A stretch of 64,000 nt of DNA. It comes from Fonticula alba ATCC 38817 (lineage: Eukaryota; Protista; Nucleariida). Of this stretch, positions 28,302-60,100 are shown in pieces. Location: assembly GCA_000388065.2 (NCBI GenBank), contig KB932204.1. One strand, given 5' to 3'. The translations under genes were made by a program, and so were the position numbers. The notes under the pieces are model-generated. The model saw nothing but the letters and a program-made list of their open reading frames with translations, did no database searches and was not told where the DNA came from. Each line of letters starts with the position of its first letter. The stretch's first letter is position 1.

Positions 28302-28338
<37 letters not shown>

Positions 28339-29029: not shown

Positions 29030-29089
<60 letters not shown>

Positions 29090-29191
29090 NNNNNNNNNNC
29101 TCCCTCTCGGGGAGCCGGGAGGCGAAGCAAAAGGGGGAACCCCAAGGGCTGGACTTGCTTCTCTGACACTGACCTTCCCTGCGGGCTCTCC

Positions 29192-29269
<78 letters not shown>

Positions 29270-32233: not shown

Positions 32234-33268
32234 GGAAAGGAGCGCCTGTGTTCGGACAGGAAGCCGCATCTTCCTTCTTCCTCCATCCCCAAACTTGCTG
32301 AGGGGGGGGGGGGGAGGCAAATGCACCTGAGTAGCACGGAGGAGGGGGGCTCCATGAAGGAGCGCAGGCCTGGCATCAGCCTGGGCAATTGCCCCGTCGT
32401 TCCTGCCACCTTCCTGCCTACCCAATAGCTTGTGACATGCACCCTGTGGGTGGAATACACCAGTACCGGTGTTCTTACTTCTTGTGATCCGCATCCATTT
32501 CGTTCGCGAGCACACACACATTGGCAAAAGGGGCGGTAGGGGGATTGTGGGGTCCGAGCGAGCGCCTGATTGCACGTGACCTGATCACGCCCGGGGAGTT
32601 CCGCGCACGCGCGCGCGTGGGAACACTCGACGAGGGAGCGCCTGTTGTAGGCAGGTCTGTTCGTGCGTCGTCCCGCCGGTCGCTGGTGCCCGGAGAGTGG
32701 GGAGGGGAACGGGCACGGGCCCGGGGGAGGCGGTGGGTGTTTTTGGTGTGTCGGGTGCCCGCGGCCGGTTGCCGCCGCAGCCACAGACAGGGCCCGGGCG
32801 CNNNNNNNNNNNNNNNNNNNNNNNNNNNNNNNNNNNNNNNNNNNNNNNNNNNNNNNNNNNNNNNNNNNNNNNNNNNNNNNNNNNNNNNNNNNNNNNNNNN
32901 NNNNNNNNNNNNNNNNNNNNNNNNNNNNNNNNNNNNNNNNNNNNNNNNNNNNNNNNNNNNNNNNNNNNNNNNNNNNNNNNNNNNNNNNNNNNNNNNNNNN
33001 NNNNNNNNNNNNNNNNNNNNNNNNNNNNNNNNNNNNNNNNNNNNNNNNNNNNNNNNNNNNNNNNNNNNNNNNNNNNNNNNNNNNNNNNNNNNNNNNNNNN
33101 NNNNNNNNNNNNNNNNNNNNNNNNNNNNNNNNNNNNNNNNNNNNNNNNNNNNNNNNNNNNNNNNNNNNNNNNNNNNNNNNNNNNNNNNNNNNNNNNNNNN
33201 NNNNNNNNNNNNNNNNNNNNNNNNNNNNNNNNNNNNNNNNNNNNNNNNNNNNCGAGAGGGATGAGCAG

Positions 33269-33326
<58 letters not shown>

Positions 33327-34581
33327 CGGGCGCGCGCCGCGCGCTGGGGCGGGGGACCCATCACTCCGGCGGCCGGCCCGGCGTTCTGGCAGAATAGACC
33401 GGGTCCGGCGACGCGAGCGTTGGCCTCTCGGGGGGTGTATGTGTGTGTGTGTGCGTGTGTGTGTGTGTGGTTGTATGGGCGTGTGTGGGTGCATGCGCGT
33501 GTGCGCGTGTGTGTATGTGTGTATGGATGCGCGTGTGTGTGCGCGGCGCACGGGCCCCAAGCGTGGGGAGGCCCCCTGTAAACACTGGACATCGCGTTCC
33601 GGCGATGGGGCTCTCGGTGTGCTGTGCGGCTGGCGGGCCGGACACGCCGGGGGCATGTATATGTGTATGTGCGTGTACGTGCGCGTGCGTGAGCGGGAGC
33701 CCTGGGTCCCATATGTCTGGCTGTCCCGCGGGTGGCTCGGGCGTTTTTTCGCAGCCCACCCCTTGTGCGACTGCGGCCGCGTCCAGGCGCACCGGCTGGG
33801 GCTGCTGGGCGGTCGGCTCGCCACCATACTGCCCCCCCCCCCAACCATCACCGTGTGCGGACCCCTGTGTGTCATGGACCGGGCGTCCGCGCCCCCGGGC
33901 GTGGTCCCGCGCCCCGGCCTCCCGGCCCCCGGGGCCCTCACCCCCGGCGGATCCCTGCCGTATGGCGGCCATGGGCCGGCTCGCCCTGGGCCTCGCCCCC
34001 CCCCCCCCCCTCCCGCCACCCNNNNNNNNNNNNNNNNNNNNNNNNNNNNNNNNNNNNNNNNNNNNNNNNNNNNNNNNNNNNNNNNNNNNNNNNNNNNNNN
34101 NNNNNNNNNNNNNNNNNNNNNNNNNNNNNNNNNNNNNNNNNNNNNNNNNNNNNNNNNNNNNNNNNNNNNNNNNNNNNNNNNNNNNNNNNNNNNNNNNNNN
34201 NNNNNNNNNNNNNNNNNNNNNNNNNNNNNNNNNNNNNNNNNNNNNNNNNNNNNNNNNNNNNNNNNNNNNNNNNNNNNNNNNNNNNNNNNNNNNNNNNNNN
34301 NNNNNNNNNNNNNNNNNNNNNNNNNNNNNNNNNNNNNNNNNNNNNNNNNNNNNNNNNNNNNNNNNNNNNNNNNNNNNNNNNNNNNNNNNNNNNNNNNNNN
34401 NNNNNNNNNNNNNNNNNNNNNNNNNNNNNNNNNNNNNNNNNNNNNNNNNNNNNNNNNNNNNNNNNNNNNNNNNNNNNNNNNNNNNNNNNNNNNNNNNNNN
34501 NNNNCTCTCTCTCTCTCTCTCTCTCTCCCCCCAACCCCCCTTGCCGCTGTGCTGTGGCGCTAACCGTGTCTGTCGTCGCAG

Positions 34582-37592: not shown

Positions 37593-40500
37593 TCACTCGA
37601 CCCGAGGCGCCAGCGACTCCGACAGCAGCGACGTCACGTCCCGGCCGGCCAGCAGCTGCGTCGTCAGGGTGATGTAGTCGCGCGTCGGGGACACCGACGA
37701 CCCGGCGCGACCGGCCGGGTTCTGCATGGCCACCGAGGAGTACCCCGTCAGGAAGCGCAGGGCCGCCACCTCGGACCAGGTGCACCCGCCGAGGTAGACC
37801 ACCAGCACGGTCTTCGGCTGGGCCGGCTCGGCGCCGGGCGGCAGGCCCGGCCCGCCGGTGGTGCCCGTGACCACCGCCGCATCGAGCGACATGTCGAACA
37901 GCGGCCCGGGCAGGCCGGCCGCGCGGAGGGCCTCGTCGATGGCGCGCCAGGCCGGCCGATCGGCGATGGCCGCCTCCGGGTCGACCGGGGTCCCGGCGCC
38001 CGGACCGGCCCCGGCCCCGGCCCCGCCGGTTGACACGGCCGACACCGCGGCCCCGAGCCCCAGGTTCAGGTTTAGCCCGGCCCCGAAAGTGGACCCCAGC
38101 GAGGCGGACAGCATGCCGGCCGCCGTGGAGGCGGTCGACCCGCGCTCCGACCCATACGCCGCGGCCAGCATCCGCTCCACCAGGCGCACCGACAGCGGGG
38201 CATACCCGGAGTGAACGTAGGAGATGTCCTCCGGGGCGGTCTCCTTGACGTCCTCGTCGAACAGATGGAAGTGCTTCCGCAGCCCGGGGTACGCGCTGGG
38301 GGTGCTGAGCCCGGGCCCGGCGGAAGCCCCGGCCCCGGCCCCGGAAAGGAAGGACCCAGGCCCCAGGGAGGGCCCGGCCCCGGCCGCCGGGCCGGGGCCA
38401 TACGGCAGTGCCGGCATCGTCACTCCCTGGCAGAAGATCAGCCCGGCGCGTTCGAAGTTCAGCAGGGTGTAGATGATTTCGTAGCCATACGACTGGATGC
38501 GGGTGTGTGTGTGTGTGTGAGTAGGCATGCGGACAGGAGGGCGAGGCTGCGGACCGGGCCGGCGCGCATCGGCAACGGCCGGCGCATGGCCCCGACAGGA
38601 GGACAGGACAGAGGGCGAGAAGCCACGCACCCCGACCAGGTGCGCCCGCAGGGTCTTGTACACCTTCGGCTTGAGGCCGCCCTGTGTCAGCGACAGGAGA
38701 CTCATCAGCCGGAGCACGCGCTCCGCCGGCACCACCTTCGAGCCAATGCCGGTGGTGGCGGCGATGCTGGTCCCGGACATGGGGCCCAGCTTGGACGCGT
38801 GCGATCCGGCCCCACTCAGAGGGTTGGTCCGGTTCAGGGGCAGGGCGTCGGACTGCCGGAAGATCAGCTCCTCCAGTAGCTCAAGCGTTTGCTCCAGGTC
38901 CTCGGACTGGCTGAGAAGGCCTGCTCATTCCCCGCAAGCGAACCGGGGGGAGGCCGAACGGGATGGCCAAGGTGTCAGATCAGGCGAGAGGGATGAGCAG
39001 CCGGGGGGGGGGGGGGGGGAGGAGGGGGCGGAGCGGACTCGCCGACACCCCGGGAGGAGCGGAAGCCCGAGCCCGAGACGCACCCTGCTCCGTTTGCAGA
39101 GCACGAAGGAAGTCCGAGTCGCGTGTGGCCGCCATCAGGTGCTCGGCCAGATTGGTGTCTGTCACAGGGTGGGAGGAGGGGAGGTCAGGCGAGAGAGCGG
39201 GAAAATGGCCGGCAGCCGCGGGAGAGAAGGCCCACTGGACGCACAGACACCGAGAGACTGGTGTTCCTTTTGCAGGCCGCCCAGGTCCGAGACGAATTCC
39301 CGGATCTGGGAGATGGTCTTGGCCGCATGCCGGCGATCGTACTGCTGGTCGATGCGCGTGGCGCTCCGGTGGAGGGCCGGCCCGACGGCCGCCAGATTAA
39401 GGTCCCGGATCTGACAGGGGCGGAAGCAGGGGGTCAGGTCCGGCTGGTGGCGGGCGTGGTTCTCCTCCCCTGCGACATACCGAGGAGTAGAGCGTGTCCG
39501 AGCTGTCCAGCATCGCGAGCTTCTGGTCGGACACCGCCGGCTTCAAAGGGAGGAGACCTGGCGAGCGAGGCGGCGGTGACCCAGGGATCATGGTTAGAGC
39601 CGAGGGCCAGGATGCGCATGTCGGTGTGGGGAGAGGCAAGAGGGCAGAGGGAGGTCGCACTGGCGTCAATCCCGAAAAAGTGGTCAATCAGCCCCTCAAA
39701 GGTGAGAGTCTGCACCAGGGGCGAGATGGGGTCCTGTGGGCGGGTAGGCGGGTTAGAGGGCGGCGGGTGCGGCGCCGGAGGGCCGTTGTGAGGGGGGAAC
39801 CGAAGGAGGGGGTGGCGGGCAAAGATCCAGCAGCAGCCAGAACGGTGGTCGGCCAGTCGCACGCACCACCATGCGATCGATGATGATGGCACAGTCGATC
39901 TTCCCGGCACCGGCCAGGCCGGAGGAGGAGGCAAGCAGATCGGAGTCGGTGGCAATCCGCCGAACCAGGCTGGCGCACTCGAGGGCACGCGGCCCGACAC
40001 CCATAATGCGCGGAATCGGACCGTAGAAGGTCTTCAAACGGAGGAGGGCCATGGCCGTGCTGTGAACCACCTCATGAGCGGTATGCTGGCGGCGAGTCGG
40101 AGGGGCGGCCAAGTGACATGGCACATAGAGAGAGAGAGGGGGGGGGGGAGATCATGAGAGGGAGGGTGTGAGGGCAAGACAGCACATGGGTGACCCATTA
40201 GCCAGGGGTAAGCAGAGATAGGTGTGCATGTGGACGTGCGCAAATACCGACATGCATGCTTGTCGATGCATGCGTGTGCGCTTCGGACAGTGAGAGAGGG
40301 AGAGGGAGGCAGGAGGGAGGTGGAGCGCACCAGGGCCATATCGCGGAAGGACCCGGGCATATGCATGCTGAGGAGATCCACGTCGAAGGGGAACATCGGA
40401 ATGTCGATGTTGCGGATCATGGGAGCTACATGCGGAGGGCACGGTCAGATCGGGGCACCGGGCGCACGGGTCCAGGATGATGTGTAGGCATGTGTGTCTG

Positions 40501-44635: not shown

Positions 44636-45176
44636 CCCCGTGCCCTGCCCTGGCTCTCGCCCCCCGTGTTGGCATGTGGGGTCGTCCTGGTTCCTTTTGC
44701 CCGGGGCTTGGTCTGGGCTTTTTTCGGCTCTCCGAAACTTGGGCCGATCACCGGCAGTCCGTTGGCACCAGGTACCCCTGATATTATTTCCCCCTCCGTT
44801 TCCCCCTGGGTGCGGGAGCCGGGCTGGCGGGCGGGGCGCGCCCCTCCCCCTGGCTCCCACCAGTTGTTGTTGTGCGTGCCCTCGGGTCCTGCGCCCCAGC
44901 GGGCCAGGCATACGAGCAATGCCCCTTGCTCGGTCGCGTCCCCGCTAGGGCAAGGGTGCTGTGATTTTTGACCGGCCGCCTTGCACCCCGAGGGCGCCAC
45001 AGCGCCCAGGGCATGCCTCCCCTCCTTGTCGGCTGCTCGCACCACATATATTCTCTCCGTCTGATCCCCCCCCCCCACTACCTGTCTTGATCCCCTCTCA
45101 AGCCCGCCCGACTTGCCTCTTCGCCTTCCTCCCCCCCCCCCTCCTCCTCTTCTCGCTCCTCTTTCGCTGCGCATCC

Positions 45177-45274
45177 ATGGAGGAGTTCTACGCCGCGGGG
45201 CTGCACCTGGCGCCGCCGCAGGCCGTCCAGCATGTGGCCGCCAAACGGGTGCAGAACTTCAACTACGTCAAGAG
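45177..45274 (+). CDS. Exon 1 of a conserved uncharacterised protein; continues at 54784
   Basis: ATG at 45177 encodes MEEFYAAGLHLAPPQAVQHVAAKRVQNFNYVK plus AG, then donor GTGCGC. It joins in phase to 54784, giving KRVQNFNYVKR-LHLGGAHFFNTVKIS. Confidence 0.7.
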
Positions 45275-45343
45275 GTGCGCGCGCCGACGGGCACATGCAC
45301 CGACGCACGCACGCACGCACACGCACGCACACACACACATACA

Positions 45344-45376
<33 letters not shown>

Positions 45377-46162
45377 GCAAAGACAAACATACGCATATGT
45401 ATGGCCCGTGTGTCGCACATCTGACCCCTTCGCCCCANNNNNNNNNNTTGCTGTCACTTTGCCAGCGCTTTGGCAACTCCCTCGACAATACCCTGCCCAT
45501 CCGTGTCACGTACCACTCTCTCTTCTTCGGATGATGTGCACACACGTGCGCGCGCGCGCGCGCGTGCCCGCCCGCCCGCCCGCCCGCCGACCCACGACCA
45601 CGGGGTGCAATGTGTGGTGACCGGAGCGGCTCGCCGCGTATATGTACATGCAAATGCGCGGGTCCACAGGCCAGCATAGTTATCTCCTCCTCGTCGCAGC
45701 TCTCCCGCCCCCTCCCCATGTAAAATATATCACAACCCCCCTCGGGGCTTTCCTCCTTGCCCCCATCTCCTCCACCTCCCACTGGGGGCCGGGGCTATCT
45801 TGTGCCCTTTTCAAGCACGGCCTCACAGCGCGGCCTCAGGCCCCAGGGCCGTTGGGATAAGCGTATTCTATTTGAGGGGGGGGGGGAGAACGAAAAGCCG
45901 ACAAAGGGAAGAGGGCGCCAGGCGGCGCACAACAGAGAGGGCGAAAGGGCCGTGCGGGGCACAGGGCTAAGGGGGGCAAAAGAAAAAAGCCCCACTGGCC
46001 GACGGGCGATCGGCCAGCCGGTCGACGGGGCGCGGGTACACACGTATGGAACTAGCTACGAGGAGGGAGGCAACACTCACACCGACCGGCGAGGCACCTT
46101 TCGAGGGTACGACAGCACACAGCGGGGCGCGGCGACCGTGACAGCAGAACATATGGCCACCC

Positions 46163-48040
46163 TTAGCCGCGGCCCTGTGGCTGGCCGGCCTTGCGCTCGC
46201 GCTCGGCCACATACCGGCCATATGCCACCTCGTCCAGGCAGCGCTGGTGCCGGTTGACCGCCTGCATGACCAGCTCGCCGTCGCGCACGAAGAGAACCCG
46301 ATCTGCGTAGCACTCCAGATCCGGGTGATGGGTCACCATCAGGAGAGTGGTGCCGTGCTCGCGGTTCAGCCGCATCAGCAGGTCCATGATGCGAATGGTG
46401 TGCCGCGTGTCCAGATCACCAGTCGGCTCATCCAGCAGCAGGAGCGGCGGGTCGTTGGCCAGGGCGCGGGCGATGGCGCTGTGCGGCGCAATTCAAAGGT
46501 GTCAGGTGGGGAAAGGCGGGGGAGCCAGAAGGAAGGCAAAGACCCCAGCTCGAGGCAGGGGCGAAACGGGGGACCGGACTACGCACACGCGCTGCTGCTC
46601 ACCACCAGACAGCTCGCTTGGCAGATGCTCAACACGATCGCGGAGGCCGACCACTGTGTTGGTTGTGGGTGTGTATGGACGGTGGGGGGGGGGGGGGGGG
46701 TGGGGGGGGGGGGGTTGGGCGGCCCAGGAAAAGAGGGGGAGAGGGCACGGATGCTGCCGCCAGCGGGGTGACGTACTGTCCAGGAGCTTCTTGGCACGCT
46801 CATCGCGCTCCTTGGCATTCAGCTTTCCCAGGAGCGACATCGGCAGGGCCACATTCTCCTTGGCGCTGAGGTTGGCCAGCAGGTTGAAAGTTTGGAAAAC
46901 AAAGCCTGACAGGGACAGAGAACATGGAAGCGCCGGGCCAGGCCGGGGAATGGGAGGAGCAGGCGTTGGGACTGTCAGGCATGGCTGGACACGGCCAAGG
47001 GAGGAGCCAGGTGGGGCTGTGGCTTGGGAGGGGCGCACCGATCTTCCGCAGGCGCAAGGCGGACAGGAAGTTGTCCGGCGAGGCGGAAGTGATCACATCG
47101 CCGAGGATCTCTGATAGAGAGAGAGAGAGAGAGAGAGAGACAGTGGGGGAGCGCAGGGCAAGGGAAGGGTCAGAAGTACTGCCGGCTGGCGGGGACACGG
47201 GGGCGTTGGGGGGGGGGGCAGCGTTGGGGAGGCGAGAATGTGCCCAGGCGGGAACACCGGATCAAGAGGCAGTACGCACCGACTCGGCCAGAACTAGGCC
47301 GATCAAGGGTACCCAGGACATTCAGTAGACTGGTCTTGCCGCCACCGGAAGGGCCACGCAGCATGACGAACTCGCCCCTGAGGACAGAGCACAGGAAGGG
47401 GGCAAAGAGCGAGGGAGAGAGAGAGAGAGAGGAAAAGAAAGAGAGAAAGGAAAGGGCGAGGTAGGGTTAGCCCATCGGCAGTGGTGAAGGTACCCACACA
47501 TATCTGGAGGAACGCGCAGGAGAACAGGGGAGGGGGCGCACTTGCGAATGGGGTAGAATTCCGAGTCCGGGGAAAGGTCAATGTCGATCAGGGCCCGGAC
47601 CGGCTCGCTGCGGCCAACAATCGAATAGTCTGCCAGATGGTCGATCAGTTAAGGGTGGCTCAGGGAGAGGAAGCCAAACAAAAGCAGGGCTCCTGGAGGG
47701 AGAAAAGCGCAGGGAAGATGGGGAGGGGGGGGGGGGCTGTGGCGGAGAGGAGCCGACATCGAAGGTGGGGCAGACAGGAAGGCACCAACGCACTCTTGGT
47801 GACGTGGGACGTCAGAATGACCGGCTCGCCGAGGGTCTTCAGCGGATAGTATCCCGGGGGCAGAGTGGGATCCTGCTTGGGGAGGGAGGCCAGCGAGCCG
47901 CTGCCCAGAGCCGATCCCTCACTACCCTCGCCGATGAGGGCGGGGTCGGTTCCGGGAGCGACGGTGGCGATGGTCGTCGGGTCGGCACCCTCGATGGGGC
48001 GCCGCCAGCCGTCGGTGCGCACAGCGGTAAGTTCGATCAT
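46163..48040 (-). CDS. Stand-alone ABC ATPase of the LolD/MacB/FtsE type (single NBD, no TM domain), multi-exon
   Basis: Walker [20 protein letters not shown], signature [12 protein letters not shown], Walker [23 protein letters not shown]-loop MVTHH. Interrupted by spliceosomal introns. Confidence 0.9.
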
Positions 48041-48063
48041 GGCTGCTGCGGGGCTCTGTGGCA

Positions 48064-48140
<77 letters not shown>
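48064..48140. repeat. Very long poly-G run between the STRAP stop and the ABC start
   Basis: About 75 consecutive G. Comparable runs at 29033-29090, 29195-29265 and 33272-33325. Confidence 0.85.
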
Positions 48141-48213
48141 CGCGGCTGGAGGGGGGGGGGGGCGGGCTCGGGCGCGACGGATTTCAAGGGGCAGAGAAGG
48201 GCAAGGGAGGACC

Positions 48214-49903
48214 TTAGGCGGAGAAAGTGCTCGGGTCTGGGCCATCCCACAGGCCATACGGCTCATACGGGCGCGTGGGCCAGAGACGCACGGTGCCGTC
48301 TTCACTCCCGGAGGCCAGGAGGCGACCGTCTGGCGAGTAGCGCAAGCTGTGCACTGGTCCATGGTGGCCCTTGAGGAGGGCTATGTGTATGGCAGAGAGA
48401 GGAGGGGGGAGAGGGGAGGGAGTATCAGGTATGTTAGAGGCATGAACCGGTGCCAATGGCGACGGGGGGCATTCCAACGCGGCGCACATGTCTGAATGGG
48501 GTTGGCTGGGTCGGAGATGTCGTAAACACCGATGTCCAGCTGGTTACCACCAGCGGCCAGGAACCGGCCGCTCTGGTGCAAGGAGGCCGACTCCACCACG
48601 AAGGGAAGATCGAACTCGTACAGCGGGTCGAAGCTGTGTCGGGCGACGGCGGAGCAGCGGAGCAGCAAGGGGAGGAGAGTAAGTGCCCTGCGCGGGCGAC
48701 TGTGGGGCGGAGCTGGGAGCAGGAACCGGGGGAGGGAGAGGGAAAGTGGACAGGGCAGAAGGACGGACCTGGTGTTGTGCGCCAGGAGGACGCTCTCACC
48801 GAAGCAGAGAGTCATCACGGAAGACCCCTCACGGGCCAGCTCCAAAGAGGTGACCTTGCTCGGAGTGGTCAGGGAGTTGACCGGCGCGGTCGGCGGGGCC
48901 CGGGTGTCCCAGAGGCTGAGGCGCAGCGCACGCCGAAGGGGGAGGAGGGTCAGTTGTGCCGGAAGGGGAGCACGCAGACACAAAGATGGAAGAGGGGGCG
49001 GGGGGGCGCTTGACGCACCGGGTAACACGGTCATCGCCGGACGTCAGGAAGAGCGTCGTGTCCGGGATGGGGGCAATGGCGCGCACGAGATCGGTGTGCG
49101 CGTCATACGAGGTGACTGTGCCATACGGGCCCCAAAGGGACGGTGAGTGGATGGTGGGGGGGCCAGGGTGGCGACAGGGAGGCGAGGGCAAGAAACGCAC
49201 CCTGGGACGGGTTGGCGGTGGAGATGCGGCAGACAGTGCCGTTTTTGGTGCCGGTGTAGATCCACTCCGGGTTGGCGCCGGGGTCGATGGCACAGGCGCG
49301 AACGATGGTCGAATGGTCGAGCTTGAAGATTGGCTCGCCATTGGAGAGGCTCCAGTAAATGCTATCCCGAGCATCGTCGGGTGGGCAGGTGCAATGGCCG
49401 GGCACGCATGCATCAAGCAGGCGAGGGACAATCGGTGAGAACCATGGGGGCGGTGACAGGAGATGGGATCCATGGGAGGGGGCAAGCAACCAGATGGCCA
49501 GCCGGCAACGCACGCAAAGTAATCGGCCGAGCCGGAGAGGGCAAACTTGGCCGTGTCCGACATGGCAACACACCAGACAGCCCCGCCATGGCCGTCCTCG
49601 CCGCCGAGGGAGCCAACCCAATCGCCAGTCGGGCATTTGCGCACGATTGGCGTCTTGTCTGGATTCGCGCCGGGTCAGAAGAAGGGCGAGGGGAGGGGAG
49701 GGGAGAAAGAGAGAGAGAAGGGGGAGAGAGAAGGGGGAGAGAGAGAGAGAGAAGGGACGAAGGGGGGCATGTGCATGTGGCACAGGCAAGGGGAAAGGGG
49801 GGCGATCGGCCCCGAGCCCGGGCATACCTTTNNNNNNNNNNCACACACACACAGGCCCAAGTGAGAGGCTCACCTCCCCCTGCAGGGAGAACGCGCCCGT
49901 CAT
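48214..49903 (-). CDS. STRAP: Serine-threonine kinase receptor-associated protein (STRAP/UNRIP), WD40; one N-terminal exon is hidden in the gap 49832-49841
   Basis: [35 protein letters not shown] matches STRAP DGKPMLRQGDTGDWIGTF.GHKGAVW. Also VESASLH and [31 protein letters not shown]. The start ([10 protein letters not shown], 49903) is inferred. Confidence 0.88.
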
Positions 49904-50280
49904 GCTGCGCCCTCCTTTTTGGACCACAGCCCTGGGCCCCTTTCTCCGATGCCGTGTGCTGGTGGATTTCCAATGTGTATTTTAATGCCAGATGACCGAA
50001 CCGCCGTCCTGCCCTGCGCACATGCACGCACAACGGTCGAGCGTGCGTCCATGCGGCCGGAGCAAGGACATGGGAAGGGGCCTCGTGTGCACGGGGGAGG
50101 GGGGAGGAAAGGAAAGCAACTACACTACCAAGCGGGGGCAGAGGATGGGGGAAAGGAGGCTGGCCCCCGTTCTCCAGAAAAGGGGGGACACGGGGAGAAA
50201 GGGCGAGCGGACAAAGAGGGGGAAAGGAGAAAGCAGGTGTGTCAGGGCACAGCGTCGGCGACATGCGAGGCCGATTTTCT

Positions 50281-52577
50281 TTAGGCAGCCGGGAAGGCCA
50301 CATCCGCGCCCTCGCGCTTGATGCCGGCATGCTGCTGCTGCTTGCTGGCTCCCACATCGTCCATGTGGCCGGCGTCCTCGGCAGCCGCACGCTCAGCCCG
50401 GTCGCTGGACCGGCTGCGAGACCGGTCGCGCCGCGACGACCGCGACGACCGCGACTCCCGGTGGCTGCGGCTGCTGCTGCCCGAAGACTCGGAGTCGCGA
50501 TCACGCTCACGGTCGCGATCGCGCTCGCGGTCGCGGTCGTGGCGGCTGCTGCTGCTGCTGCTGCTGCTGCTGCCGCCGCCGCCGCTGCCGCGGTCGTAGC
50601 GGTCGGTCCGGCGCTCGCGGTCACGATCACGCTCGCGGTCGCGCTCCCGGTCGCGGTCGCGCTCGCGGTCGCGCTCGCGCTCACGGTCCCGATCCCGGTC
50701 ATGATGGCGCTCACGGTCCCGATCGTGATGGCGGTCGCGGGGGTCGCGGTCGCGCTCACGATCGCGGTCGTAGTGGCGGTCGCGCTCACGGTCGCGCTCC
50801 AGCTCACGCGAGGACTCATACCGCCGGGGGTCACGGCTGTCGCGCTCGTAACGGTCCATCTCTCGGCGACCGGAGTCCCGACGTCCGGACGACCGATAGT
50901 GCGAATCGCGCGAGCGCGAGCGACCCCGACGAGTGTAATCCCCACGGGTGGGGCGCCCGCGTGAGGGGCTGCGCGAGCGGCTCCGTAGACGCTGCGGGTG
51001 CTGCAGGTGCGGCGAGTGCTGCGGGTGCGGCAGGTGCTGCAAGTGGTGCGGGTGCGGGTGGGGGTGGCCTCCGGTCAGGGGGGCCGTGCGTCGCGGGCGG
51101 TTGATGGCCTTGCGCGCCGGGGACACCTTGATAGCACGGTCGTGGATCATAGTGCCGGACAGCTGCATGGCAGCCTGTAGTCCCAGGGAGAGAGAGGGAG
51201 AGAGGGAGAGAGGGAGAGAGGGAAAGAGGGAGAGAGAGAGAGAGGGAGGGAGAGAGAGAGAGGGAGAGAGAGAGAGGGNNNNNNNNNNNNNNNNNNNNNN
51301 NNNNNNNNNNNNNNNNNNNNNNNNNNNNNNNNNNNNNNNNNNNNNNNNNNNNNNNNNNNNNNNNNNNNNNNNNNNNNNNNNNNNNNNNNNNNNNNNNNNN
51401 NNNNNNNNNNNNNNNNNNNNNNNNNNNNNNNNNNNNNNNNNNNGAGAGAGAGAGAGAGAGAGGAAGGGACAAAGAGAGGAGGAATAAGAGTCAGGCACAG
51501 CGGCACAGAGGGCAACGGGTACGTGGGATGATTGAAAAGCAGGAACAAGCCCGACAGCAAGGCATGGGCAACGCACCGACGCAGCGAAGGCAGTCTCGTA
51601 CTCGATGTGGAGGTAGATGTTGCCAGCCGGATTGTCGGACGGGGGGTTAGACACACGCAACTCGGCAATTTGACCGAACTGCGAAAAGAGATCCTGCAAC
51701 TCGGACTCCGATGCCAGTGGCGAGACATTGGACACGTAAAGGGTGCGCGCCAGCAGGGGGTTGGCCATCGGCAACCCGGGGACCATGACCCCCACCGCAC
51801 CGGGCAGGAGCCCCGGCATCCCGGGGAGCATGCCGCCCCCCAGCGGGAGGTTGGTCATCATCGGGCCAGCCGACATGTCTGAAGTGCACGCGCGTGCGTC
51901 GGCAGAGGGGCCAAAAGGCGGCCGCATTGGGTGGTGAGTCTTCCACGGCAATGAGAGGACATGAGGAGGCAAGAGGACGACCGAGGGAGCAGGCAAGATA
52001 ATACACCCAGGCCAGTAGATCATGATGATGGGCACGAGGCAGAAGGAAAAAAAAAAGGAGTCGCAGGCCACGCACTTCGGAAGGTATCAATCGAATGATG
52101 GGCCGCGGCGGTGCGCGCCTGGCGTACCGCCTCGGCAATCATGCCGGGATCGGTCAGCATATTCTCGTCAGCCATGGAAACCCGCAGGGGGACCGTCGCG
52201 CCGAAGGAAACCCCGTCCAGCGCCAGCGACGCCAGGGCCGGGGCCGGTGAATCGAACTGAATGAGGAAGGTCAGCAGCTGGATGGGCGCCGAGGAGCCAG
52301 CCACCGCGGCCAGGGCAGAGGCCGTGGCCGCGGCCGCGGCCGCCCGGTCCGTCTCGCACACCACTCGAATAATGAGCCCAAAGTGTGAGAAGAGTTCGTG
52401 CAGTCGCTCTACCGAGCTGGGCGCGACATTCTCCACACGGACGGTTGACCGCGATAGGGCCGCACCGGACAGGCGCCGGTCCACCGGCGAAGGGCTGGCC
52501 GCGTCGTCGGCCGCCGGGTCGGCGACCATCGGCGCCGCGACCGCGCCATCCGCCGCGACAAACAGCGGGGAGGACAT
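50281..52577 (-). CDS. Two-RRM SR/RD-rich splicing factor, SREK1/SRSF11-like
   Basis: RRM1 STVRVENV..LHELFSHFG..ALDGVSFG. RRM2 ARTLYVSNV..LQDLFSQFGQI..LSGTMIHDRAIKVSPARKAINRP (compare SRSF11 LKINHSNNAIVKP). RSRSRS and long RD/RE repeats in the tail. Confidence 0.8.
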
Positions 52578-54142
52578 CCTGACTGTGATTTGCTGGCTGG
52601 TTCGGGGAGGGGGAGAGAGGGAGGGGGGGTGCAGGGGGGTGCAGATAGGGTAGAGGAGCTGCGGGGCAGGCGCTGCAAGTGGAAGCACAGAAGACAGATG
52701 GGGGACGAGGGGAGGAGGAGAAGAGGAGGAGAGGAGAGAGAGGGAGTGCAAGCGGGCGCAGGACAGGCAAGGGGGGACTCGGCGCGATGCAGGGGTTGCC
52801 ACAAGACCGGGCTTCGGTGCGGGGAGGGAGCTCGCCAAAAAAACTGTCCCCCCCCCCCCCGTTCCTGGAGCCGATCACTCCCGTGTACTTTGTGTGGTCC
52901 CCCCAGGCAGGGCCACCAATGTGCGGGGGTCATGCGGGGGGGGGGGACATTGGAGAAGACTGGAGTGCAGCGCAGACGGCGCGGAGGCGCTCACCGCTGA
53001 CGCACACTCACGGCCGCCCATGCACACATGACACGGAGGTGCGCGCCCATTTGCATTGTCCCAAGAACGACAAGGGCGAGGCTCCTGGGGTCGCCCGACG
53101 CCGCGCGGAGTCCCCCCGGGCGCGCACTGGGCAAACCCCATCGCGCTAGAAAACCGGCGATATCCCCTTCCGGTGATCCTTCACCAGGGGGCAGACGTTC
53201 CGGAACAGCCGGCGGCAGGCAGGCCGAAATGCCGACGTGATGTGCGGGCCCCGGTAGAATGCCATTGTGTGACGACTCCTCGGGGCGTGATCAGACCCTT
53301 CGTTGGCAGCCTCCCGCCGACTCCAGAACCCTTGCTACTCGGGCCATCGCCGATGGGCCTTTGATGGCCGTGTATGTGCGTGTCTCCGTCGTCCGGCCCC
53401 GGCGCGGGAGAGAGAGAGAGAGAGAGAGAGGCCGGGGGCCGGCGCCTTTTCCCCTAGTCCCTCGAATAATGGCGCACGGAGGAAGAGCATGAAAAGAGGA
53501 CAACCGCTGGTGCTTGGGGAACTGCCGATCGGGAAACCACCTCTGTTGGTCCTCCCCCTCCTGTCAGCTCGCGCCCATCGCACGTGCACTGGTGTCGGTG
53601 TGACACGCGAGAACCGGGGGGTGGGAAATCCATTTGTGTATTATCGTTGTTGCTGTTTGCGGAAGAAGCGGGGGGAGAAGGGAGGAAAGAGAAGAGAAAG
53701 AAGCATGCCAGCGTCATTTTGCACCAGCGGGAAGAGGGGGGGAGGGAGAGAAAGGAGATGAGCAAGTGCGCGCAGCACAAGTTGATACGCCTCTTTTTCC
53801 CGGGGAAGAAGATGAGAGCGCACTCTTCGTCGGTGACGCTGACGGAGGGGGCGCGGCCGGCAGCACAGGCAGGGGCAGAGGTCCCCGAGATGATGATGCC
53901 GCCGTCATCACCACCACCAGCAGCAGCAGCAGCAGCAGCGGCGGCGGCGGCGGTGGCAGCACTGCTTGAGGAGACATCCTTCCCTCGCATGTCCCCCCCC
54001 CCCCCTCCCTCTCCCCCGTCCGGCCGCCTGCCCGAGAGAGAAAGGCGGGGACAGGGAGGTAGAGCATGGGAGAAGCGCCGCCCGAGGGGCGGGAGCCAAA
54101 CCAGGAGCATGTGAAAAGGAGAGCACAAGTCTCCCCCTCTCC

Positions 54143-57100
54143 TTAGGCGATCAGGCGGGCGATGAACTCGGCCGTCGGGTGGTCCGGCGCGCGGACGGTG
54201 ATCTGCATGACGATGGCCGGGATGCCGGTGGGCGAAGAGTCGGCCGACACGCGGACCAGCCGCACGCGGATCAGGCAGGGCGGCTGGCGGCCAAGCAGGC
54301 GGCCAGACAGCAGGAGCGTGTGGGTGTGGGCCTCCTCGCCGGTGTCCGGGCTGGACAGGACCGTCTCCGACCCGTCGGACGCCCGCATGCCGAGCAGGCC
54401 GATCACCGACCGGACCAGAGCCTGCAGGGGGGCCTGCTCGGCGGACACCGGCAGGGTGTAGGTCTCGGAGAACTCGGTGTTCTTGTTGAAAAGGGACCAC
54501 GCGTCACGGAAGGAGGCCTGTGCCAGAGAAGGTGGCGCCGGCCCGGAAGCGATCATGTTGTCGGCAAGGGTGATCTCCACCGGCTCGAGCTGTGTCGCCA
54601 TGCATGGCGATGCGGGCAATGCCCCAACGGGCAGGGTTTACACGGAGGGGCAAGGGGGTGAGGAAAGGGCTGAGAAAGTGCAGGGCCGCGAAAGAGAGGG
54701 AGAGAGAGAGAGAGGGAGGGAGGGAGAGGGAGGGAGGGAGNNNNNNNNNNCCCCCCACTCCTCTCCTCTCCCTGGCTTCCTAGGTTGCATCTCGGCGGCG
54801 CGCACTTTTTCAACACCGTTAAGATCAGCTACAGCGACATTCGGTCGTGCTACCCCAACTCCAAGATGAAGAAGCGGTGCGCCTACAATGCCGCCCTCTC
54901 CCCCTGGCCATCTGCCCACCTTGCTGACATGCTGCCGCGTCCCTCATGTGCCACCATCAGCTCGGCACACTGGTTCCAGCTTGGCGTCAGCCTTGCGCCG
55001 ATCTTGCGTGTCAATGATCCAATTGCATATGCCCGCTTCCTGGATCTCCTCACCGAGGAGTATGAGTATGAGACCACGGAATTCGCGCGCGTTGTGCGTC
55101 CTCCTTCGGTCTTTTTCACCTCCCCGCCCCCGCCCCCGCCCCCCCCCCCCCTCGCTCGTCTTTGCCTTGCCTCCTCCCGCTTCTGCTGACCGACTGCATG
55201 CACTCCCTTTCCCTCTCGTTTTTCTCCCCTTCCCCTCCTCCCCGCCTCTGATAGCGGCAAATGTTCCGTGTGACCAAGGACTCCGGGCCGGATGACCCGT
55301 ACACCATCGAGCGAAGCTACCTCGAAACCGGCCTCTACACGTATCTGCAGACGCCCAACATCGTGCGTTTTGATGCTGGCCCTTTCCCCTCCCATCTCTC
55401 CTGGAGTTCGTGCACATTCCGCGTGACTGACCTTTGCACAGCCCTACGAGCTGGACTATTTCGAGGTGGTCTTCTCCCTGTGTGATATGCTGAGCTCGGC
55501 GTACCTCCGGGCCAGCGAGATCGCCGAGCGCCATCCCGAGATGGACGTGGCCTTCATTTCGGCCTTTATGCGCATCGACTCGCGCTTCAGGGTGCGTATC
55601 AAGCCCATCGGCCATGGCCAGCGCCGCATTTGCTTGGCCTCACTTCTGACCGGGCTCCTCGCTGGATTGCCATTGGCTCTTCCGTCGGGGGTGTAGAAAA
55701 TCCTGGACATTGTGTCCACCGAACTGGACAAGCTGGCCGGGCGCATTGTCAAGCGCGAGATCACTCGTCTGGACCCGCTGCAGGTGGGCATGGTGACGGC
55801 TGGCGCCGGGAACACCGGGCGCGGGAATGCGTACGACTCGGACGGCGCCGACGCCTCCCACGCCACCGGGGCCGGGCCCTTGGACGAGGGGTCCGCTGGG
55901 GCCGGCGAGAGCCACATCATCGCCTCACTCAATCGCATGGGGTTGGACTACATGTCCGGTGAGGAGGATGACGCCGAGGAGGATGATGACTGGGCGGCTG
56001 CCGTGGCGGCCCTCGCTGCGCAGGGGGGCCAAGACGAGTCGTAGTGGCTGTCATGCGTGCGTGCGTGCGTGCGTGTGTGTGTGTGTGTGTGTGTGTGTAC
56101 TTGCATGCTCGTGTCTGCATGCGGGCGCCTGCACAGATGCACGTGCGTGTGCATCCCCGGCCCTTCCCCTTCCGCTGCATCGGCACAATAGAGATCGCCT
56201 GCTGGCACAGCCTCACGGAGGGACGCGTGTTTGGGTATGCGCGCGCGCGTGTGTGTGTGTGGATTTCGGTGTATTCATTTTGACAGAGAGAGAGAGAGAG
56301 GGAGAGAGAGGGAGGGATGGACACCGCGACCGGCGCCCAGACGGCCGGAGTCCGGCCGGCCGTTGTGGGGCCGAGCCGAGGGGAGGGGGGTCGGCGGCAC
56401 ACCAACGGAAGGAGAGGAAGAAGAGCGGAGAGAAAGCAAGGACAGTAGACGCGCGACGGTTCCGTCCAGTATGGGGGAAGAAGAAGGGGGATGTGGAGAG
56501 AGAGAGAGAGAGAGAGGGAGAGAGACAGGGAGGGCCTGGCTCCCACCAGTTGTTGTTGTGCGTGCCCTNNNNNNNNNNGGGAGAGGGAGAGGGAGGGAGA
56601 GGGAGAGAGAGAGAAGGGGGGGAAGAGGGAAGAACCACAGGCTGGGCCGAGAAACACGGCTGGGCACACGCACATCATAGCGATCGGTGTAGGAGCTCGG
56701 CGAGGGCTCCATCGTGTCGGGATCGATGTCGCGCACGGTGAACAGCAGGTGCGTCCCGAAGGAGGCCACGATCGGCATGGTCACCGCCCCGACGGCCGCC
56801 ATCTCCGGGGTCAGAACCGTGTCCTCGGTGACCGGGACCGACTCGGTGGCCCGGAGGACGATGAAGCTCCGGGCGGTCTCATTCGGGCCGATGACCGGCG
56901 CCGGCAGGACCAGCTCCGCCTGGCAGATGCCGCCATACTGGTCCAGGTCCAGCTCCACCGACACATCCTCGATCTGCTGCTCGGCCAGGGTGTTGGCAAT
57001 GTCAAACTGCAGCACCACCACCGACTTGTAGATGTGCTTCACCAGGGCCACCGAGAACTCGGTGCCGGCCTCGGTCAGAGGGACCGGACCGGCCGAGGAC

Positions 57101-60100
57101 CGGAGGGGCACGCCATAAGGCGACAGCTGCGGCACCGAGAGCAGAACCGACGACACGTCGGCCAGCTTGGCGAAATCATTGCCGGCGGCCGCGCCACCAG
57201 GCGACAGGGCCGTGCCACTGGCCGCTCCCGGCGAGAGGGTCGACGCATCCAGGATATCCTTGGCGTTGGGGACGATGATGGTGTCTGTATCGAGGGGACC
57301 AGGCGCGGATGGGGGGGGGGGGGGGGCGGGGGCCGGTTAGCAGCAGGACAAGCCCATGGGCAGTGGCAGAGGAAGGGGAGGGGGGGGGGAGCAGGGCGAG
57401 AGCAAACAGCGAGCGAGACACACCCTTGGCGCCGATGTAGCCAAGCAGCTCCTCCTCGAGCGGGGTGCCCATGGCATCGGCGAAGTCGCTCTCCCCGAAG
57501 CCGGTCTCCGCCGCGCCAGGCTTGGCCCCACCACCGGCGGCCAGTGCCGACTGCAGCATCACCGCGTCAATGAGCGAGCAGTAGTACGACGCCCGGTCGC
57601 GGACCTCGTCATCGGCATCGCGCGTGCACCGCTCCAGCAGCACCCGCACGGACTTCCGAAGCGACGCATGGGTCTCGCGCGCCGTGCGCAGGGCCAGCAT
57701 GTAGTCCTCGCGTGAGAGCTCGTCCCCGCCGGCCGACGGCAGCGGGACCGACGAGGGGGGCGGGCTCAGGGCAAACTTGGCCAGGGCCGAACAGGCAGCC
57801 GCGCGGACTGGCGCCGATTCCAGGATGACGCGGTTGTTGATGTAGCTGGCATGCGCGCGAAGGGGTCGGAGTATGAGCACGAGGGGCACGCGAAGGACCG
57901 GGGGGGGCAAAAGCAAGCAGGACGGAAGCAGGAAGGGGAGAGGGCAGGGAAGAAAACGTGTGAGATGCGCACCGGATGAACTTCCCGGGGCAAGAAGTGT
58001 TCGGAGCCTCGGCGCCAAGGAAATTCAGCACGCGAATGGCCAGTGCCGGGAACTCGCAATCCTCGATGAACTCGCACAGGTGGAGGAGGGCTGGACACAG
58101 GCCGGAGCGGGAGACGAACAAAGATGGTGGGGGGGGGGTGACTGTGAGAAAGACAACCAAGCGATGTGCACGTGGGTGCCGGCGTGGGCGCATGGATGGA
58201 GGACACGGCGGAGGGAAGGGGGACACGCACCGAACTCCCGCGACTCGGGAACATTATGGGCACAGGTGATGAGGGCATCAACCAGGGAGCGCTTGAAGGC
58301 AAGACCGCCATCATCCCGCAGGCAGGAGGCCAGGAAGTGGAACTGTACAGCCGGGCGGGGGGGGGTGTCAGTGTCGCTTGCCCGGGGAGGAAAGGAGGGC
58401 ACTCGGGGGACAGGCAAGATGCGTGGCGTGGCGCGGCGTGGCGCGGCGTGGCAGAAGCCGCAGCCACGGCACGCACGAATGCACGCATGGGGACATACCA
58501 GGCGGGTTTGCTTGGAGGGGAACTTGAAGAACAGGGCCCGGACGGCATCGACCAGGACGCAGCGGAACTCATCCGGCATCTCCGGCATCAGTGCCTCCAC
58601 CTGAACCAGCAGGCGGTCCACCGAAGCCTCACTGCCCGTCTGCGTGTGTGGGTGTGTGTGGGGGGGGGATGGGAGGGTGGAAAATGGTCAAAAAAAGAGC
58701 TCTTGTCCAGAGGAAGGGTGCGAAGACAGACGAAGGGAGGGGAGACACCAAGAAGAGACAGTCCTACCTTGAGCAGGGTAGTCACGGCCAAAGTGGCTAT
58801 CGACCGGTTGGGATCAGCCACCAGGGCCTCGATGTCGAGGTTGCATTGCGACACGGACAGCGGGTGGCTGGCGGCAATCTGGGCCAGGGTCCGGAGGGCG
58901 GAGAACCGGAACAGTGGCCGGGCCGAGGAGAGGAACTGCTGAAGGGCTGCGTGGATGGCGTCGTCAGTATGGGGACAATGGGCAGCAGCGGAGGGGGAGG
59001 GAGGGAGCGGGCGATGGCAAGGACGGGCAGGGCAGGGCAGGCATGAGTGCGCGCGTACCAGAGATGGCTGGCAGAAGCTCGCGACTGGTGACGCTCGGCA
59101 GGGCGGCAATGGCGCGCGCGGCCTCCAGGACCACCATGTCGCTCTTGTACCGGACAAGCGACTCCAGCATGGGGTAGAACTGCTTGCGGGCGCTGTGGAT
59201 CCCAGAGAGGGCAGTGCGAACGGGGCAAGGGGGGAAGGGGGGAGAGAGAGAGAGAGAGAGAGAGAGAATGTGCCCATTGTCAGGGGATCAGGCAGGGGGC
59301 GAGGCACAGGCGAGGGGGCTAGGAAAGATCGCATCGCACCCGCTGTCGGGGCTCTCCTCGCGCAGGATGGTGCCAATGTGCCGGGCCAGCATCATGGTGG
59401 CGTGCGGGGAATTGCCAATGAAGCCGGCATTGACCGACTGCATGATGGACTGGAGGAACTTCAGGACGGCGGTGCGGTCGCGCGAGCGGATCTCGCAGAT
59501 GAGGGCCATCGCGTGGTACTTGATCATGGGGGCTGCAAAGGCGTGTGAACCAGTGGACGGGTGGGCGGACGAGGGGGGTGAATGACGCGGCCGGGGGGCA
59601 GCTTGGGAAAAGGCGATCCCCAGCCAGGGGGATAGGCCATCCGGTGGGGGGGGGGGGCTGTTGGTGGGCGTACACTGGCGCGAGATGGCCTCGGTGGCCT
59701 CCTGGATCCAGCGGCGGATGGTCTCGCGGATCATGGAGGCCGAGCTGCCACCAGTATAGAGCAGGCGCAGCGAGGAGACCAGCGCGGCGGAGGACACCAC
59801 CGGCGACCGGTCGACAATGGCCTGGCGAATGAGGCGCTCAACCGACGGCAGAACGGAGGGCTACAGGTGAAGGGTGCCACGAGCAGACATGTGGTCAGGG
59901 GGGGAGGGGGGGGGGGGGGCATAAGAGGAAAGTCGATCGGCGTGTGTCAGTGTATGGGTGGGTGGGTGTGTGTGTGTACGCGTGCGGCCGGGCCGTGGCA
60001 GCGGATGGTGCACAATCACAGCAGTGGCAACGTACGTCGGTCATGACAATGGAGATGAGCGCACGCAGGGCGTTGGCCCGATAGATGGCGCCCTCGCCAG

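What the first reader, a model, noticed from the sequence alone, without database searches (positions are those of the whole stretch)
45177..56673. Split gene: exon 1 lies 9.5 kb from exons 2-6, which sit antisense inside the last COPG intron
Seen in sequence: exon 1 ends AAG AG|GTGCGC and the acceptor at 54783 supplies the G, giving a continuous 309-aa ORF (KRVQNFNYVKR/LHLGGAHFFNTVKIS). As assembled, intron 1 would contain three whole antisense genes (ABC ATPase, STRAP, SR protein) plus the last COPG exon, while COPG's last intron contains exons 2-6. Nearly all other introns here are about 80-300 bp. Evidence for a misplaced contig: the block 54751-56568 is bounded by two 10-N gaps; both COPG-side flanks are the same GA microsatellite; and the sequence before the gap at 45438 (CTGAC branch point plus C-tract) fits directly onto the block's C-tract/TAG acceptor. 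Inference: most likely a scaffolding error that hides a real gene from annotators, but true interleaving or trans-splicing cannot be excluded. From memory, the KR..LNY.KR.H.G..HWFNT motif belongs to a conserved uncharacterised family in fungi and amoebae.
Basis: partly seen in the sequence, partly recalled or inferred. Interest (0 to 1): 0.75.

Follow-up and report, generated by a model that had tools for sequence, protein, structure and literature searches.

The report
Misplaced contig splits a real gene
A real six-exon gene of an unnamed, conserved protein family looks split over 9.5 kb and interleaved with the coatomer-gamma gene, most likely only because a 1.8-kb contig was put into the wrong assembly gap: an assembly fault, not new biology.

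Summary
Exon 1 (45177-45274) and exons 2-6 (54784-56044) give a 930-nt reading frame of 309 codons plus a stop. All five donors read GTGCG, and each intron has one CTGAC 10-64 nt before its acceptor.

The gene is real. Homologues from early fungi, a nucleariid, dictyostelids and heterolobosean amoebae match all six exons in order. They run straight across the exon 1/2 join: K32, the split-codon R, then LHLGG line up with P0001 residues 32-37.

The split is almost certainly an artefact.
- The 1818-nt block lies between two 10-N gaps inside one GA microsatellite in the last COPG intron. With the block that intron is 2084 nt; without it, 246 nt.
- COPG reads on across the intron with no residue missing.
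- A 10-N gap sits 163 nt after the exon-1 donor. Placing the block there gives a 196-nt intron 1.
- The block's last 34 nt are identical to 44849-44882, 295 nt upstream of exon 1's ATG.

No reads were available, so the placement is inferred. No protein of this genome appeared among the family hits, so the gene seems unannotated. The family has no Pfam model and no convincing fold match. The scan did not find this before; notes elsewhere in this genome describe similar assembly loops.

The parts
44849..44882 (+). 34-nt sequence identical to the last 34 nt of the block; it ends 295 nt upstream of the exon-1 ATG
   Evidence: 100% match, and the only non-microsatellite match of the block anywhere in the 31.3-Mb assembly
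45177..45274 (+). Exon 1: ATG plus 32 codons plus 2 nt; encodes the N-terminal KRVQNFNYVK motif
   Evidence: First ATG in the frame. Residues 17-32 align to P0001 residues 17-32 at E 3e-4. It is the only profile hit outside the block in the whole window. It is followed by a GTGCGC donor.
45275..45437 (+). Left part of intron 1: GTGCGC donor, CA/CG microsatellite, CTGAC at 45421-45425; runs up to the gap
45438..45447 (.). 10-N gap; the proposed true position of the block
   Evidence: It lies 163 nt after the exon-1 donor. With the block here intron 1 would be 196 nt plus the unknown gap length.
54690..54740 (.). GA/GGGAG microsatellite; left half of the tract inside the COPG intron
54741..54750 (.). 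10-N gap at the left edge of the block
54751..56568 (+). 1818-nt contig (the block) carrying the end of intron 1, exons 2-6, the 3' flank and the 34-nt terminal repeat; most likely misplaced
   Evidence: Unique in the assembly apart from microsatellites and the 34-mer. It carries GA repeats at 56282-56321 and 56486-56534 that resemble the COPG-intron microsatellite.
54784..54876 (+). Exon 2 (its first G completes the Arg codon); encodes LHLGGAHFFNTVKIS...
   Evidence: Profile hit at positions 46-80, E 4.6e-9. Aligns to P0001 residues 34-63 at 63% identity.
54961..55093 (+). Exon 3
   Evidence: Profile positions 80-122, E 1.2e-12. Aligns to P0001 residues 65-106.
55255..55362 (+). Exon 4
   Evidence: Profile positions 128-167. 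Aligns to P0001 residues 111-144 at E 1e-11.
55442..55591 (+). Exon 5
   Evidence: Profile positions 167-216, E 8e-11. Aligns to P0001 residues 145-194.
55697..56044 (+). Exon 6 with the TAG stop at 56042-56044; conserved start followed by an acidic low-complexity tail
   Evidence: Profile positions 215-243. Aligns to P0001 residues 195-222.
56535..56568 (+). Last 34 nt of the block; an exact copy of 44849-44882
56569..56578 (.). 10-N gap at the right edge of the block
56579..56629 (.). GA/GGGAG microsatellite; right half of the tract inside the COPG intron
56674..57156 (-). COPG penultimate coding exon (appendage platform domain); ends GAT followed by a GTGCGT donor
   Evidence: PF08752 at 1.3e-31. 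Aligns to 1r4x_A residues 18-152 and 5a1u_E residues 617-751.
54590..56673 (-). Last COPG intron as assembled: 2084 nt, or 246 nt without the block and its two gaps
   Evidence: Phase 0 on both sides.
54143..54589 (-). Last COPG exon (C-terminal appendage domain plus stop)
   Evidence: PF16381 at 1.1e-12. Its residue 5 aligns to 1r4x_A residue 158, so the chain continues without a missing residue.

Best explanation
There is one ordinary six-exon gene on the + strand. It encodes a 309-aa all-alpha protein of an unnamed family conserved in eukaryotes. In the real genome exons 2-6 most likely follow exon 1 directly.

The 1818-nt contig 54751-56568 belongs in the 10-N gap at 45438-45447. The scaffolder instead dropped it 9.3 kb further on, into another gap: the one that a long GA microsatellite had opened in the last intron of the minus-strand COPG gene.

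A likely cause is that the small contig carries GA repeats of the same kind in its 3' part. Read pairs anchored in those repeats could link it to the wrong gap, and small contigs are easily misordered within one mate-pair insert length. This cause is inferred, not shown.

Shown: the gene model, its homology across the join, the seamless COPG, and the geometry of the gaps. Inferred: the true position of the block.
For: 1. Gene model. The frame is 930 nt, 309 aa plus stop. There are five GTGCG donors and one CTGAC per intron.

2. Homologues span the join.
- Exon-1 residues 17-32 align to P0001 residues 17-32.
- P0001 residue 33 is the Arg made by the split codon. Residues 34-63 match exon 2, R64 is the next split codon, and exons 3-6 tile residues 65-222.

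3. Profile search of the window. A family profile was run against every six-frame piece of the window. Its six best hits are exactly the six exons, all on the + strand and in model order. The next hit has E 19.

4. Whole-assembly search. The family is found only in the block. The match there starts at model position 46, so an upstream exon is required, yet only 33 nt precede exon 2 in the block.

5. COPG does not need the block.
- 1r4x_A residue 152 aligns to residue 160 of the exon ending at 56674.
- 1r4x_A residue 158 aligns to residue 5 of the exon starting at 54589.
- The two exons are therefore contiguous, in phase 0.
- Removing the block and its gaps turns a 2084-nt intron into a 246-nt one and rejoins the two halves of one GA microsatellite.

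6. A gap lies 163 nt after the exon-1 donor. Putting the block there gives a 196-nt intron 1 with CTGAC 45 nt before the acceptor, inside the range of introns 2-5.

7. The block's last 34 nt equal 44849-44882, which ends 295 nt upstream of exon 1's ATG. This is its only non-microsatellite match in 31.3 Mb.
- Other contig ends in this window copy sequence 1-2 kb upstream (2.0 kb and 0.95 kb; a third copies sequence 5.7 kb downstream).
- The block's copy would be about 2.4 kb upstream if the block is moved, but 11.7 kb as assembled.

8. The block's GA tracts are 88-90% similar to both flanks of the COPG-intron gap.
Against: - No reads, read pairs or second assembly could be consulted.
- The end of the contig at 45437 and the start of the block share no overlapping bases, so the join is not demonstrated at the base level.
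- The 34-nt repeat shows that the local structure is not a simple insertion. Either a short direct repeat brackets the gene, or the unit is looped or duplicated in the assembly graph.
- The scaffolder presumably had some pair support for its placement.
- The exon-1 match alone is weak (8 bits against the profile; E 3e-4 pairwise) and gains its force from context.
Confidence: 0.88

Rival explanations
1. The assembly is right. The gene really has a 9.5-kb first intron holding three antisense genes and the last COPG exon, while its exons 2-6 sit antisense inside the last COPG intron. This would be reciprocal nesting of two genes.
For: It is what the scaffold shows. Orientation is kept, and the splice signals would allow it.
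Against: - The other four introns of the gene are 79-161 nt.
- The block is bounded by gaps on both sides and splits one microsatellite.
- A gap sits exactly in intron 1.
- The block's end copies sequence next to exon 1 rather than the sequence beyond its own gap.
- COPG would have a 2084-nt intron where 246 nt suffices.
Confidence: 0.04
2. The block belongs at the exon-1 locus, but the real structure is more complex. Either the roughly 2.4-kb unit (44849 to the end of the block) is tandemly duplicated and collapsed, or it is bracketed by a true direct repeat of 34 nt or more. The scaffolder could not place the looped contig.
For: - The block end equals 44849-44882 exactly, so in graph terms the block leads back to the gene's own upstream region.
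- Similar loops occur at 21834/23854 (2.0 kb) and 28146/29100 (0.95 kb) in this window.
- Unchecked notes report the same elsewhere in this genome.
Against: - No coverage data are available.
- The contig ends at 45437, 54751 and 45448 do not overlap each other as a clean cycle would require.
- The repeat could also be a chimeric contig end.
Confidence: 0.15
3. Exon 1 is a chance match. The true first exon is lost in a gap or lies elsewhere, and the block is an orphan contig of unknown origin.
For: Exon 1 scores only 8 bits against the family profile (E 0.11 in the window). The whole-genome first look could not detect exons this short.
Against: - It is the top hit outside the block.
- It is on the right strand and upstream.
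- It starts with the first ATG of its frame.
- It has the same N-terminal length as P0001 (33 residues).
- It ends at model position 47, just before exon 2's first full codon at position 49; the split-codon Arg fills 48.
- It has the gene's own GTGCGC donor in the phase needed to rebuild the conserved Arg.
Confidence: 0.05
4. Exon 1 and exons 2-6 are transcribed separately and joined by trans-splicing.
For: None beyond the assembled distance.
Against: All signals are ordinary cis-splicing signals identical to those of introns 2-5. The geometry of the gaps explains the distance.
Confidence: 0.01

Closest known systems
Local misordering of a small contig in a mate-pair scaffold (a known class of assembly error)
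   Same: A short contig (1.8 kb) lies between two minimal 10-N gaps, in the right orientation, within about 10 kb of where it fits. It is inserted into a repeat-caused gap and carries the same repeat type itself.
   Different: Not verified with reads. In addition, the contig's end repeats 34 nt from upstream of the gene's first exon, so the local graph is a loop rather than a simple break.
Nested genes (a gene lying within an intron of another gene on the opposite strand)
   Same: As assembled, exons 2-6 lie antisense in a COPG intron, and three genes lie in intron 1.
   Different: Reciprocal nesting with a 9.5-kb intron would be far outside this gene's own intron sizes (79-161 nt). The boundaries coincide with assembly gaps.
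Unnamed eukaryotic protein family. Examples: Cokeromyces recurvatus BX663DRAFT_504369, Neoconidiobolus K502DRAFT_324214, Entomophthora DSO57_1012241, Naegleria gruberi NAEGRDRAFT_58715, Acrasis kona AKO1_003897, Polysphondylium violaceum CYY_006566, and a Parvularia transcript.
   Same: All six exons match collinearly over the whole conserved core. The match includes the N-terminal KR..(F/L).Y..R.H.G..(H/F/Y).(F/L)N motif, the LG.S.AP.L block, EYEY and LDY...F.LCD. The closest member is 42-63% identical per exon.
   Different: This copy has a longer, acidic, Gly/Ala-rich C-terminal tail. The family has no Pfam model, no named member and no convincing solved-structure relative, so no function can be transferred.

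Membership tests
Scaffolding misplacement of a contig | The piece is bounded by assembly gaps on both sides | tested here: met
   10-N gaps at 54741-54750 and 56569-56578
Scaffolding misplacement of a contig | Removing the piece restores a normal host structure | tested here: met
   The COPG intron goes from 2084 to 246 nt. The two halves of one GA microsatellite rejoin. The COPG protein is contiguous: 1r4x_A residue 152 precedes the intron, and residue 158 aligns to the 5th residue after it.
Scaffolding misplacement of a contig | A nearby gap exists where the piece fits in orientation and content | tested here: met
   Gap 45438-45447 lies 163 nt after the exon-1 donor on the same strand. Intron 1 becomes 196 nt with CTGAC 45 nt before the acceptor.
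Scaffolding misplacement of a contig | Reads or read pairs span the corrected joins and contradict the assembled ones | not testable with these tools
Unnamed conserved family (BX663DRAFT_504369 / NAEGRDRAFT_58715 type) | Significant, collinear similarity over the whole conserved core | tested here: met
   phmmer E 4e-15 with exons 2-3. The profile hits all six exons in order. Exons tile P0001 residues 17-222.
Unnamed conserved family (BX663DRAFT_504369 / NAEGRDRAFT_58715 type) | Invariant or near-invariant residues of the alignment: K23, R24, G37, N43, R64, L71, G72, S74, E97 in P0001 numbering | tested here: met
   All can be read in the exon translations aligned in A1. These are KR in exon 1; G and N in exon 2; R at the exon 2/3 split codon; LG.S and E in exon 3.
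Unnamed conserved family (BX663DRAFT_504369 / NAEGRDRAFT_58715 type) | Known biochemical function or a curated family model | tested here: not met
   No Pfam family for any of 22 members. No PDB sequence relative. Foldseek found nothing below E 0.79 and the best VIA Z was 7.7 on generic helices. The Atlas neighbours are all 'hypothetical protein'.
Reciprocally nested (interleaved) genes | Continuous sequence, without gaps, from the host exons into the nested exons | tested here: not met
   Both borders of the block are gaps. Intron 1 also contains four gaps.
Coatomer gamma (COPG), the host gene | Appendage platform and C-terminal appendage domains in order | tested here: met
   PF08752 at 1.3e-31 and PF16381 at 1.1e-12 on the exons flanking the block. 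Both match PDB chains 1r4x_A and 5a1u_E.

The most novel reading that the evidence does not exclude
The scaffold is correct and two genes on opposite strands are truly interleaved. The unnamed gene's exons 2-6 would lie inside the last COPG intron, while the last COPG exon and three further genes lie inside its 9.5-kb first intron, in a genome whose introns are otherwise about 80-250 nt. The 34-nt repeat would then be a relic of the rearrangement that produced this layout.
Probability: 0.03. Interest if true: 0.65.

Novelty: not a real feature. Interest (0 to 1): 0.2.

Why it matters
The striking arrangement is an assembly fault, so it says nothing new about gene architecture or splicing. There are two practical points.

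No protein of this genome appeared in two profile searches of the protein collection. Comparative studies would therefore wrongly score the family as lost in this key lineage next to fungi.

Second, the case gives a simple recipe for finding more such errors in this assembly: small contigs between 10-N gaps that split a microsatellite inside a neighbour's intron.

As a side result, the family itself is conserved from early fungi and nucleariids to dictyostelids and heterolobosean amoebae. It is about 240-310 aa, all-alpha, and has no Pfam model and no recognisable solved fold. It is a modest candidate for characterisation.

Tried and rejected
- **Pfam on each exon separately:** nothing even at E 10.
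- **ESM Atlas with exon 6:** no usable hit.
- **PDB sequence search** with exons 2-3 and with the family profile: only noise.
- **First AlphaFold model** from 8 sequences: too poor to use, pLDDT 56.
- **Second AlphaFold model** from 22 sequences: good, pLDDT 80.5. It gave no meaningful fold match. Foldseek's best was E 0.79. VIA-wide's best was Z 7.7 at rmsd 7.6 on generic helical proteins, below the level the tool itself calls informative for helical bundles.
- **De Bruijn k-1 idea:** I first read the 34-nt identity as a k-1 overlap because another contig end also gave exactly 34. I dropped this when the other case proved to be a 105-nt near-identical copy interrupted by a homopolymer difference. 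The 95-nt exact identity at 28146/29100 may still be such a signature.
- **Unplaced contigs bridging 45437, 45448 or the block start:** none in the assembly.
- **Literature:** nothing on the assembler or on the family.
- **The look-up of encoding contigs:** closed, so public read assemblies could not be consulted.
- Exons were searched by reference. The only multi-exon query was the stop-free genomic read-through 54785-55093.
- **A better exon-1 candidate elsewhere in the genome:** could not be excluded at the needed sensitivity.
Full report
**What is in the sequence**

- Exon 1 runs from the ATG at 45177 to 45274 and is followed by GTGCGC. This ATG is the first in its frame after an upstream stop.
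- The block 54751-56568 opens with 33 nt of C/T-rich sequence ending in TAG. Exon 2 starts at 54784 with the G that completes an AGG codon begun by the last two bases of exon 1.
- The six exons are 98, 93, 133, 108, 150 and 348 nt. That is 930 nt, or 309 codons plus TAG, and the phases fit at every junction.
- All five donors read GTGCG[C/T].
- Each intron holds exactly one CTGAC, 10-64 nt before its acceptor. The motif occurs only 0.0009 times per nt in the window.
- Introns 2-5 are 84, 161, 79 and 105 nt. Intron 1 as assembled is 9509 nt.

None of the five gaps inside the finding touches coding sequence of this gene. The operators' question about frame continuity across gaps therefore does not arise for the reading frame. 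The exon 1/2 link rests on splicing only.

**Is the gene real, and does exon 1 belong to it?**

Single exons gave nothing in Pfam. I then searched 1.84 billion representative proteins with the stop-free genomic stretch 54785-55093, which is exon 2, the intron-2 read-through and exon 3. This found a family, with best E-values of 4e-15 and 5e-15.

The homologues carry the N-terminal motif that exon 1 encodes, directly in front of the exon-2 sequence.
- In P0001 (239 aa), residues 17-32 align with exon-1 residues 17-32 at E 3e-4.
- Residue 33 is the Arg made by the split codon.
- Residues 34-63 match exon 2, and R64 is the next split codon.
- Exons 3-6 tile residues 65-222.

A profile of 22 family members was searched with all filters off against every six-frame piece of the 64-kb window. 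Its six best hits are exactly the six exons, all on the + strand. They follow model order: positions 30-53, 46-80, 80-122, 128-167, 167-216 and 215-243. The next hit has E 19.

Across the whole 31.3-Mb assembly the family is found only in the block. The match there begins at model position 46, so an upstream exon is needed, and only 33 nt precede exon 2 in the block.

It fails to refute the model, so the gene model stands.

**Is the split real?**

On the minus strand, the exon ending at 56674 carries the COPG appendage platform domain (PF08752, 1.3e-31). It ends GAT followed by a GTGCGT donor. The exon starting at 54589 carries the C-terminal appendage domain (PF16381, 1.1e-12).

I compared both exons with the solved human appendage, chain 1r4x_A.
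- Residue 160 of the first exon aligns with chain residue 152.
- Residue 5 of the second exon aligns with chain residue 158.
- With one more residue at the end of the first exon, the two are exactly contiguous, in phase 0.

COPG therefore needs nothing from the block. As assembled its last intron is 2084 nt. Without the block and its two 10-N gaps it is 246 nt, and the two outer flanks join into one GGGAG/GA microsatellite. Such a tract is exactly the kind of sequence that breaks a short-read contig.

On the other side, a 10-N gap lies 163 nt after the exon-1 donor. Putting the block there gives a 196-nt intron 1 with CTGAC 45 nt before the acceptor, like the other introns.

The three pieces would then read in this order: sequence up to 45437, the block, 45448-54740, and 56579 onward. 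Every junction then makes biological sense: an intron, an intergenic spacer between convergent genes, and a microsatellite in an intron.

**A new piece of evidence, and an unexplained detail**

The block is unique in the assembly except for microsatellites and its last 34 nt. Those 34 nt are identical to 44849-44882, which ends 295 nt upstream of exon 1's ATG. So the block's 3' end is tied to the exon-1 locus, not to the sequence beyond its own gap.

Other contig ends in this window behave similarly.
- 23854-23958 copies 21834-21939 at 99% identity, 2.0 kb upstream.
- 29100-29256 copies 28146-28302, with the first 95 nt exact, 0.95 kb upstream.
- 33253-33296 copies 38985-39028.

If the block is moved to gap 45438, its loop measures about 2.4 kb, in line with the 0.95-kb and 2.0-kb upstream cases. 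As assembled it is 11.7 kb.

Unchecked notes on other parts of this genome describe the same kind of loops and 95-nt identities.

I cannot tell which of three things the second 34-mer is:
- a true short direct repeat bracketing the gene;
- the trace of a collapsed tandem duplication;
- a chimeric contig end.

No unplaced contig bridges any of the open ends. There are no overlapping bases between 45437 and 54751.

**Why the scaffolder may have erred (inference)**

The block carries GA tracts at 56282-56321 and 56486-56534. They are 88-90% similar to both flanks of the COPG-intron gap. Read pairs anchored in such repeats give false links. A 1.8-kb contig can also be placed in any gap within one mate-pair insert length.

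**Surroundings**

Between exon 1 and the block, on the minus strand, I found:
- an ABC-type ATPase (weak PF00005 hits at 46502-47364);
- a WD40 protein (48214-49644);
- an RRM protein (within 50281-52071);
- the last COPG exon.

I did not test the finer names STRAP and SR protein.

**What the protein is**

Members of the family come from many lineages:
- Mucoromycota: Cokeromyces, Jimgerdemannia, Bifiguratus;
- Glomeromycota: Acaulospora, Entrophospora;
- Zoopagomycota: Entomophthora, Neoconidiobolus;
- the nucleariid Parvularia;
- the dictyostelid Polysphondylium;
- Heterolobosea: Naegleria, Willaertia, Acrasis, Percolomonas;
- many environmental contigs.

Atlas neighbours are unnamed clusters from Chytridiomycota and Ascomycota. 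Every source name is 'hypothetical' or 'uncharacterized'. No member has a Pfam family.

An AlphaFold model of the closest homologue, built with 22 sequences, is confident (pLDDT 80.5, pTM 0.77). It is all-alpha with one small hairpin at the HF(L/F)NTVK motif. Foldseek found nothing below E 0.79. The Foldseek-independent search peaked at Z 7.7 on unrelated helical proteins, below the level that is informative for helical bundles.

My best guess is a helical scaffold or adaptor subunit of a conserved cytoplasmic complex. This is an inference from fold type and distribution only, with low confidence.

No protein from this genome appeared among the hits of the three word-indexed protein searches. 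Each covered lengths of 131-418 aa. This suggests that the gene is missing from the public annotation. I did not verify that this genome's proteome is in that collection.

**Organism**

The assembly size of 31.3 Mb in 214 pieces agrees with my memory of that assembly. I did not test it.

**Verdict**

- The gene is real. I put that at about 0.95 for exons 2-6 and about 0.9 for exon 1.
- The interleaving is an assembly artefact, at about 0.88-0.9.
- True reciprocal nesting or trans-splicing together get under 0.05.

Interest is low. The result is a correction to an assembly and an annotation, plus a pointer to an unnamed conserved protein family.

**Limits**
- No reads or second assembly were available.
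- The joined protein was not searched or folded.

Noticed in passing
window 23854-23958 and 21834-21939: The contig end at gap 23959 is a 99% identical copy of sequence 2.0 kb upstream (105 vs 106 nt, differing by one homopolymer base). This is an assembly loop, a collapsed tandem duplication or a chimeric contig end.
   Followed up: partly
window 29100-29256 and 28146-28302; poly-C at 29031-29089: The contig that starts after the 10-N gap at 29090-29099 begins with a copy of sequence 0.95 kb upstream. The first 95 nt are exact and 157 nt match at 94%. It then runs into a long poly-C tract like the one before the gap. The 95-nt exactness matches what another note on this genome ascribes to the assembler.
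   Followed up: partly
window 33253-34021: A 769-nt contig between two larger gaps starts with a 35-nt exact (44 nt at 95%) copy of 38985-39028, 5.7 kb downstream, followed by a long poly-G run. It may be another small contig placed in the wrong gap.
   Followed up: no
window 48064-48140, 33271-33326, 29031-29089, 29193-29266: Very long G or C homopolymer runs of about 55-77 nt stand in intergenic or intronic positions. Several lie next to gaps and are likely a main cause of contig breaks in this assembly.
   Followed up: no
proteins P0001, P0016, P0032, P0036, P0039, P0058 (family of the gene at window 45177-56044): This is a conserved eukaryotic family (early fungi, nucleariids, dictyostelids, Heterolobosea). 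It has no Pfam model, no named member and no recognisable solved fold, although its all-alpha AlphaFold model is confident.
   Followed up: partly
protein P0014 (Bifiguratus adelaidae, 597 aa): The family domain sits at residues 436-476 onward, behind DUF5614 and DUF1308 domains. This is probably a merged gene model of two neighbours, less likely a true fusion.
   Followed up: no
window 49832-49841 and 51279-51443: Two further gaps fall inside or next to the WD40 and RRM genes on the minus strand. Those gene models may be incomplete as well.
   Followed up: no
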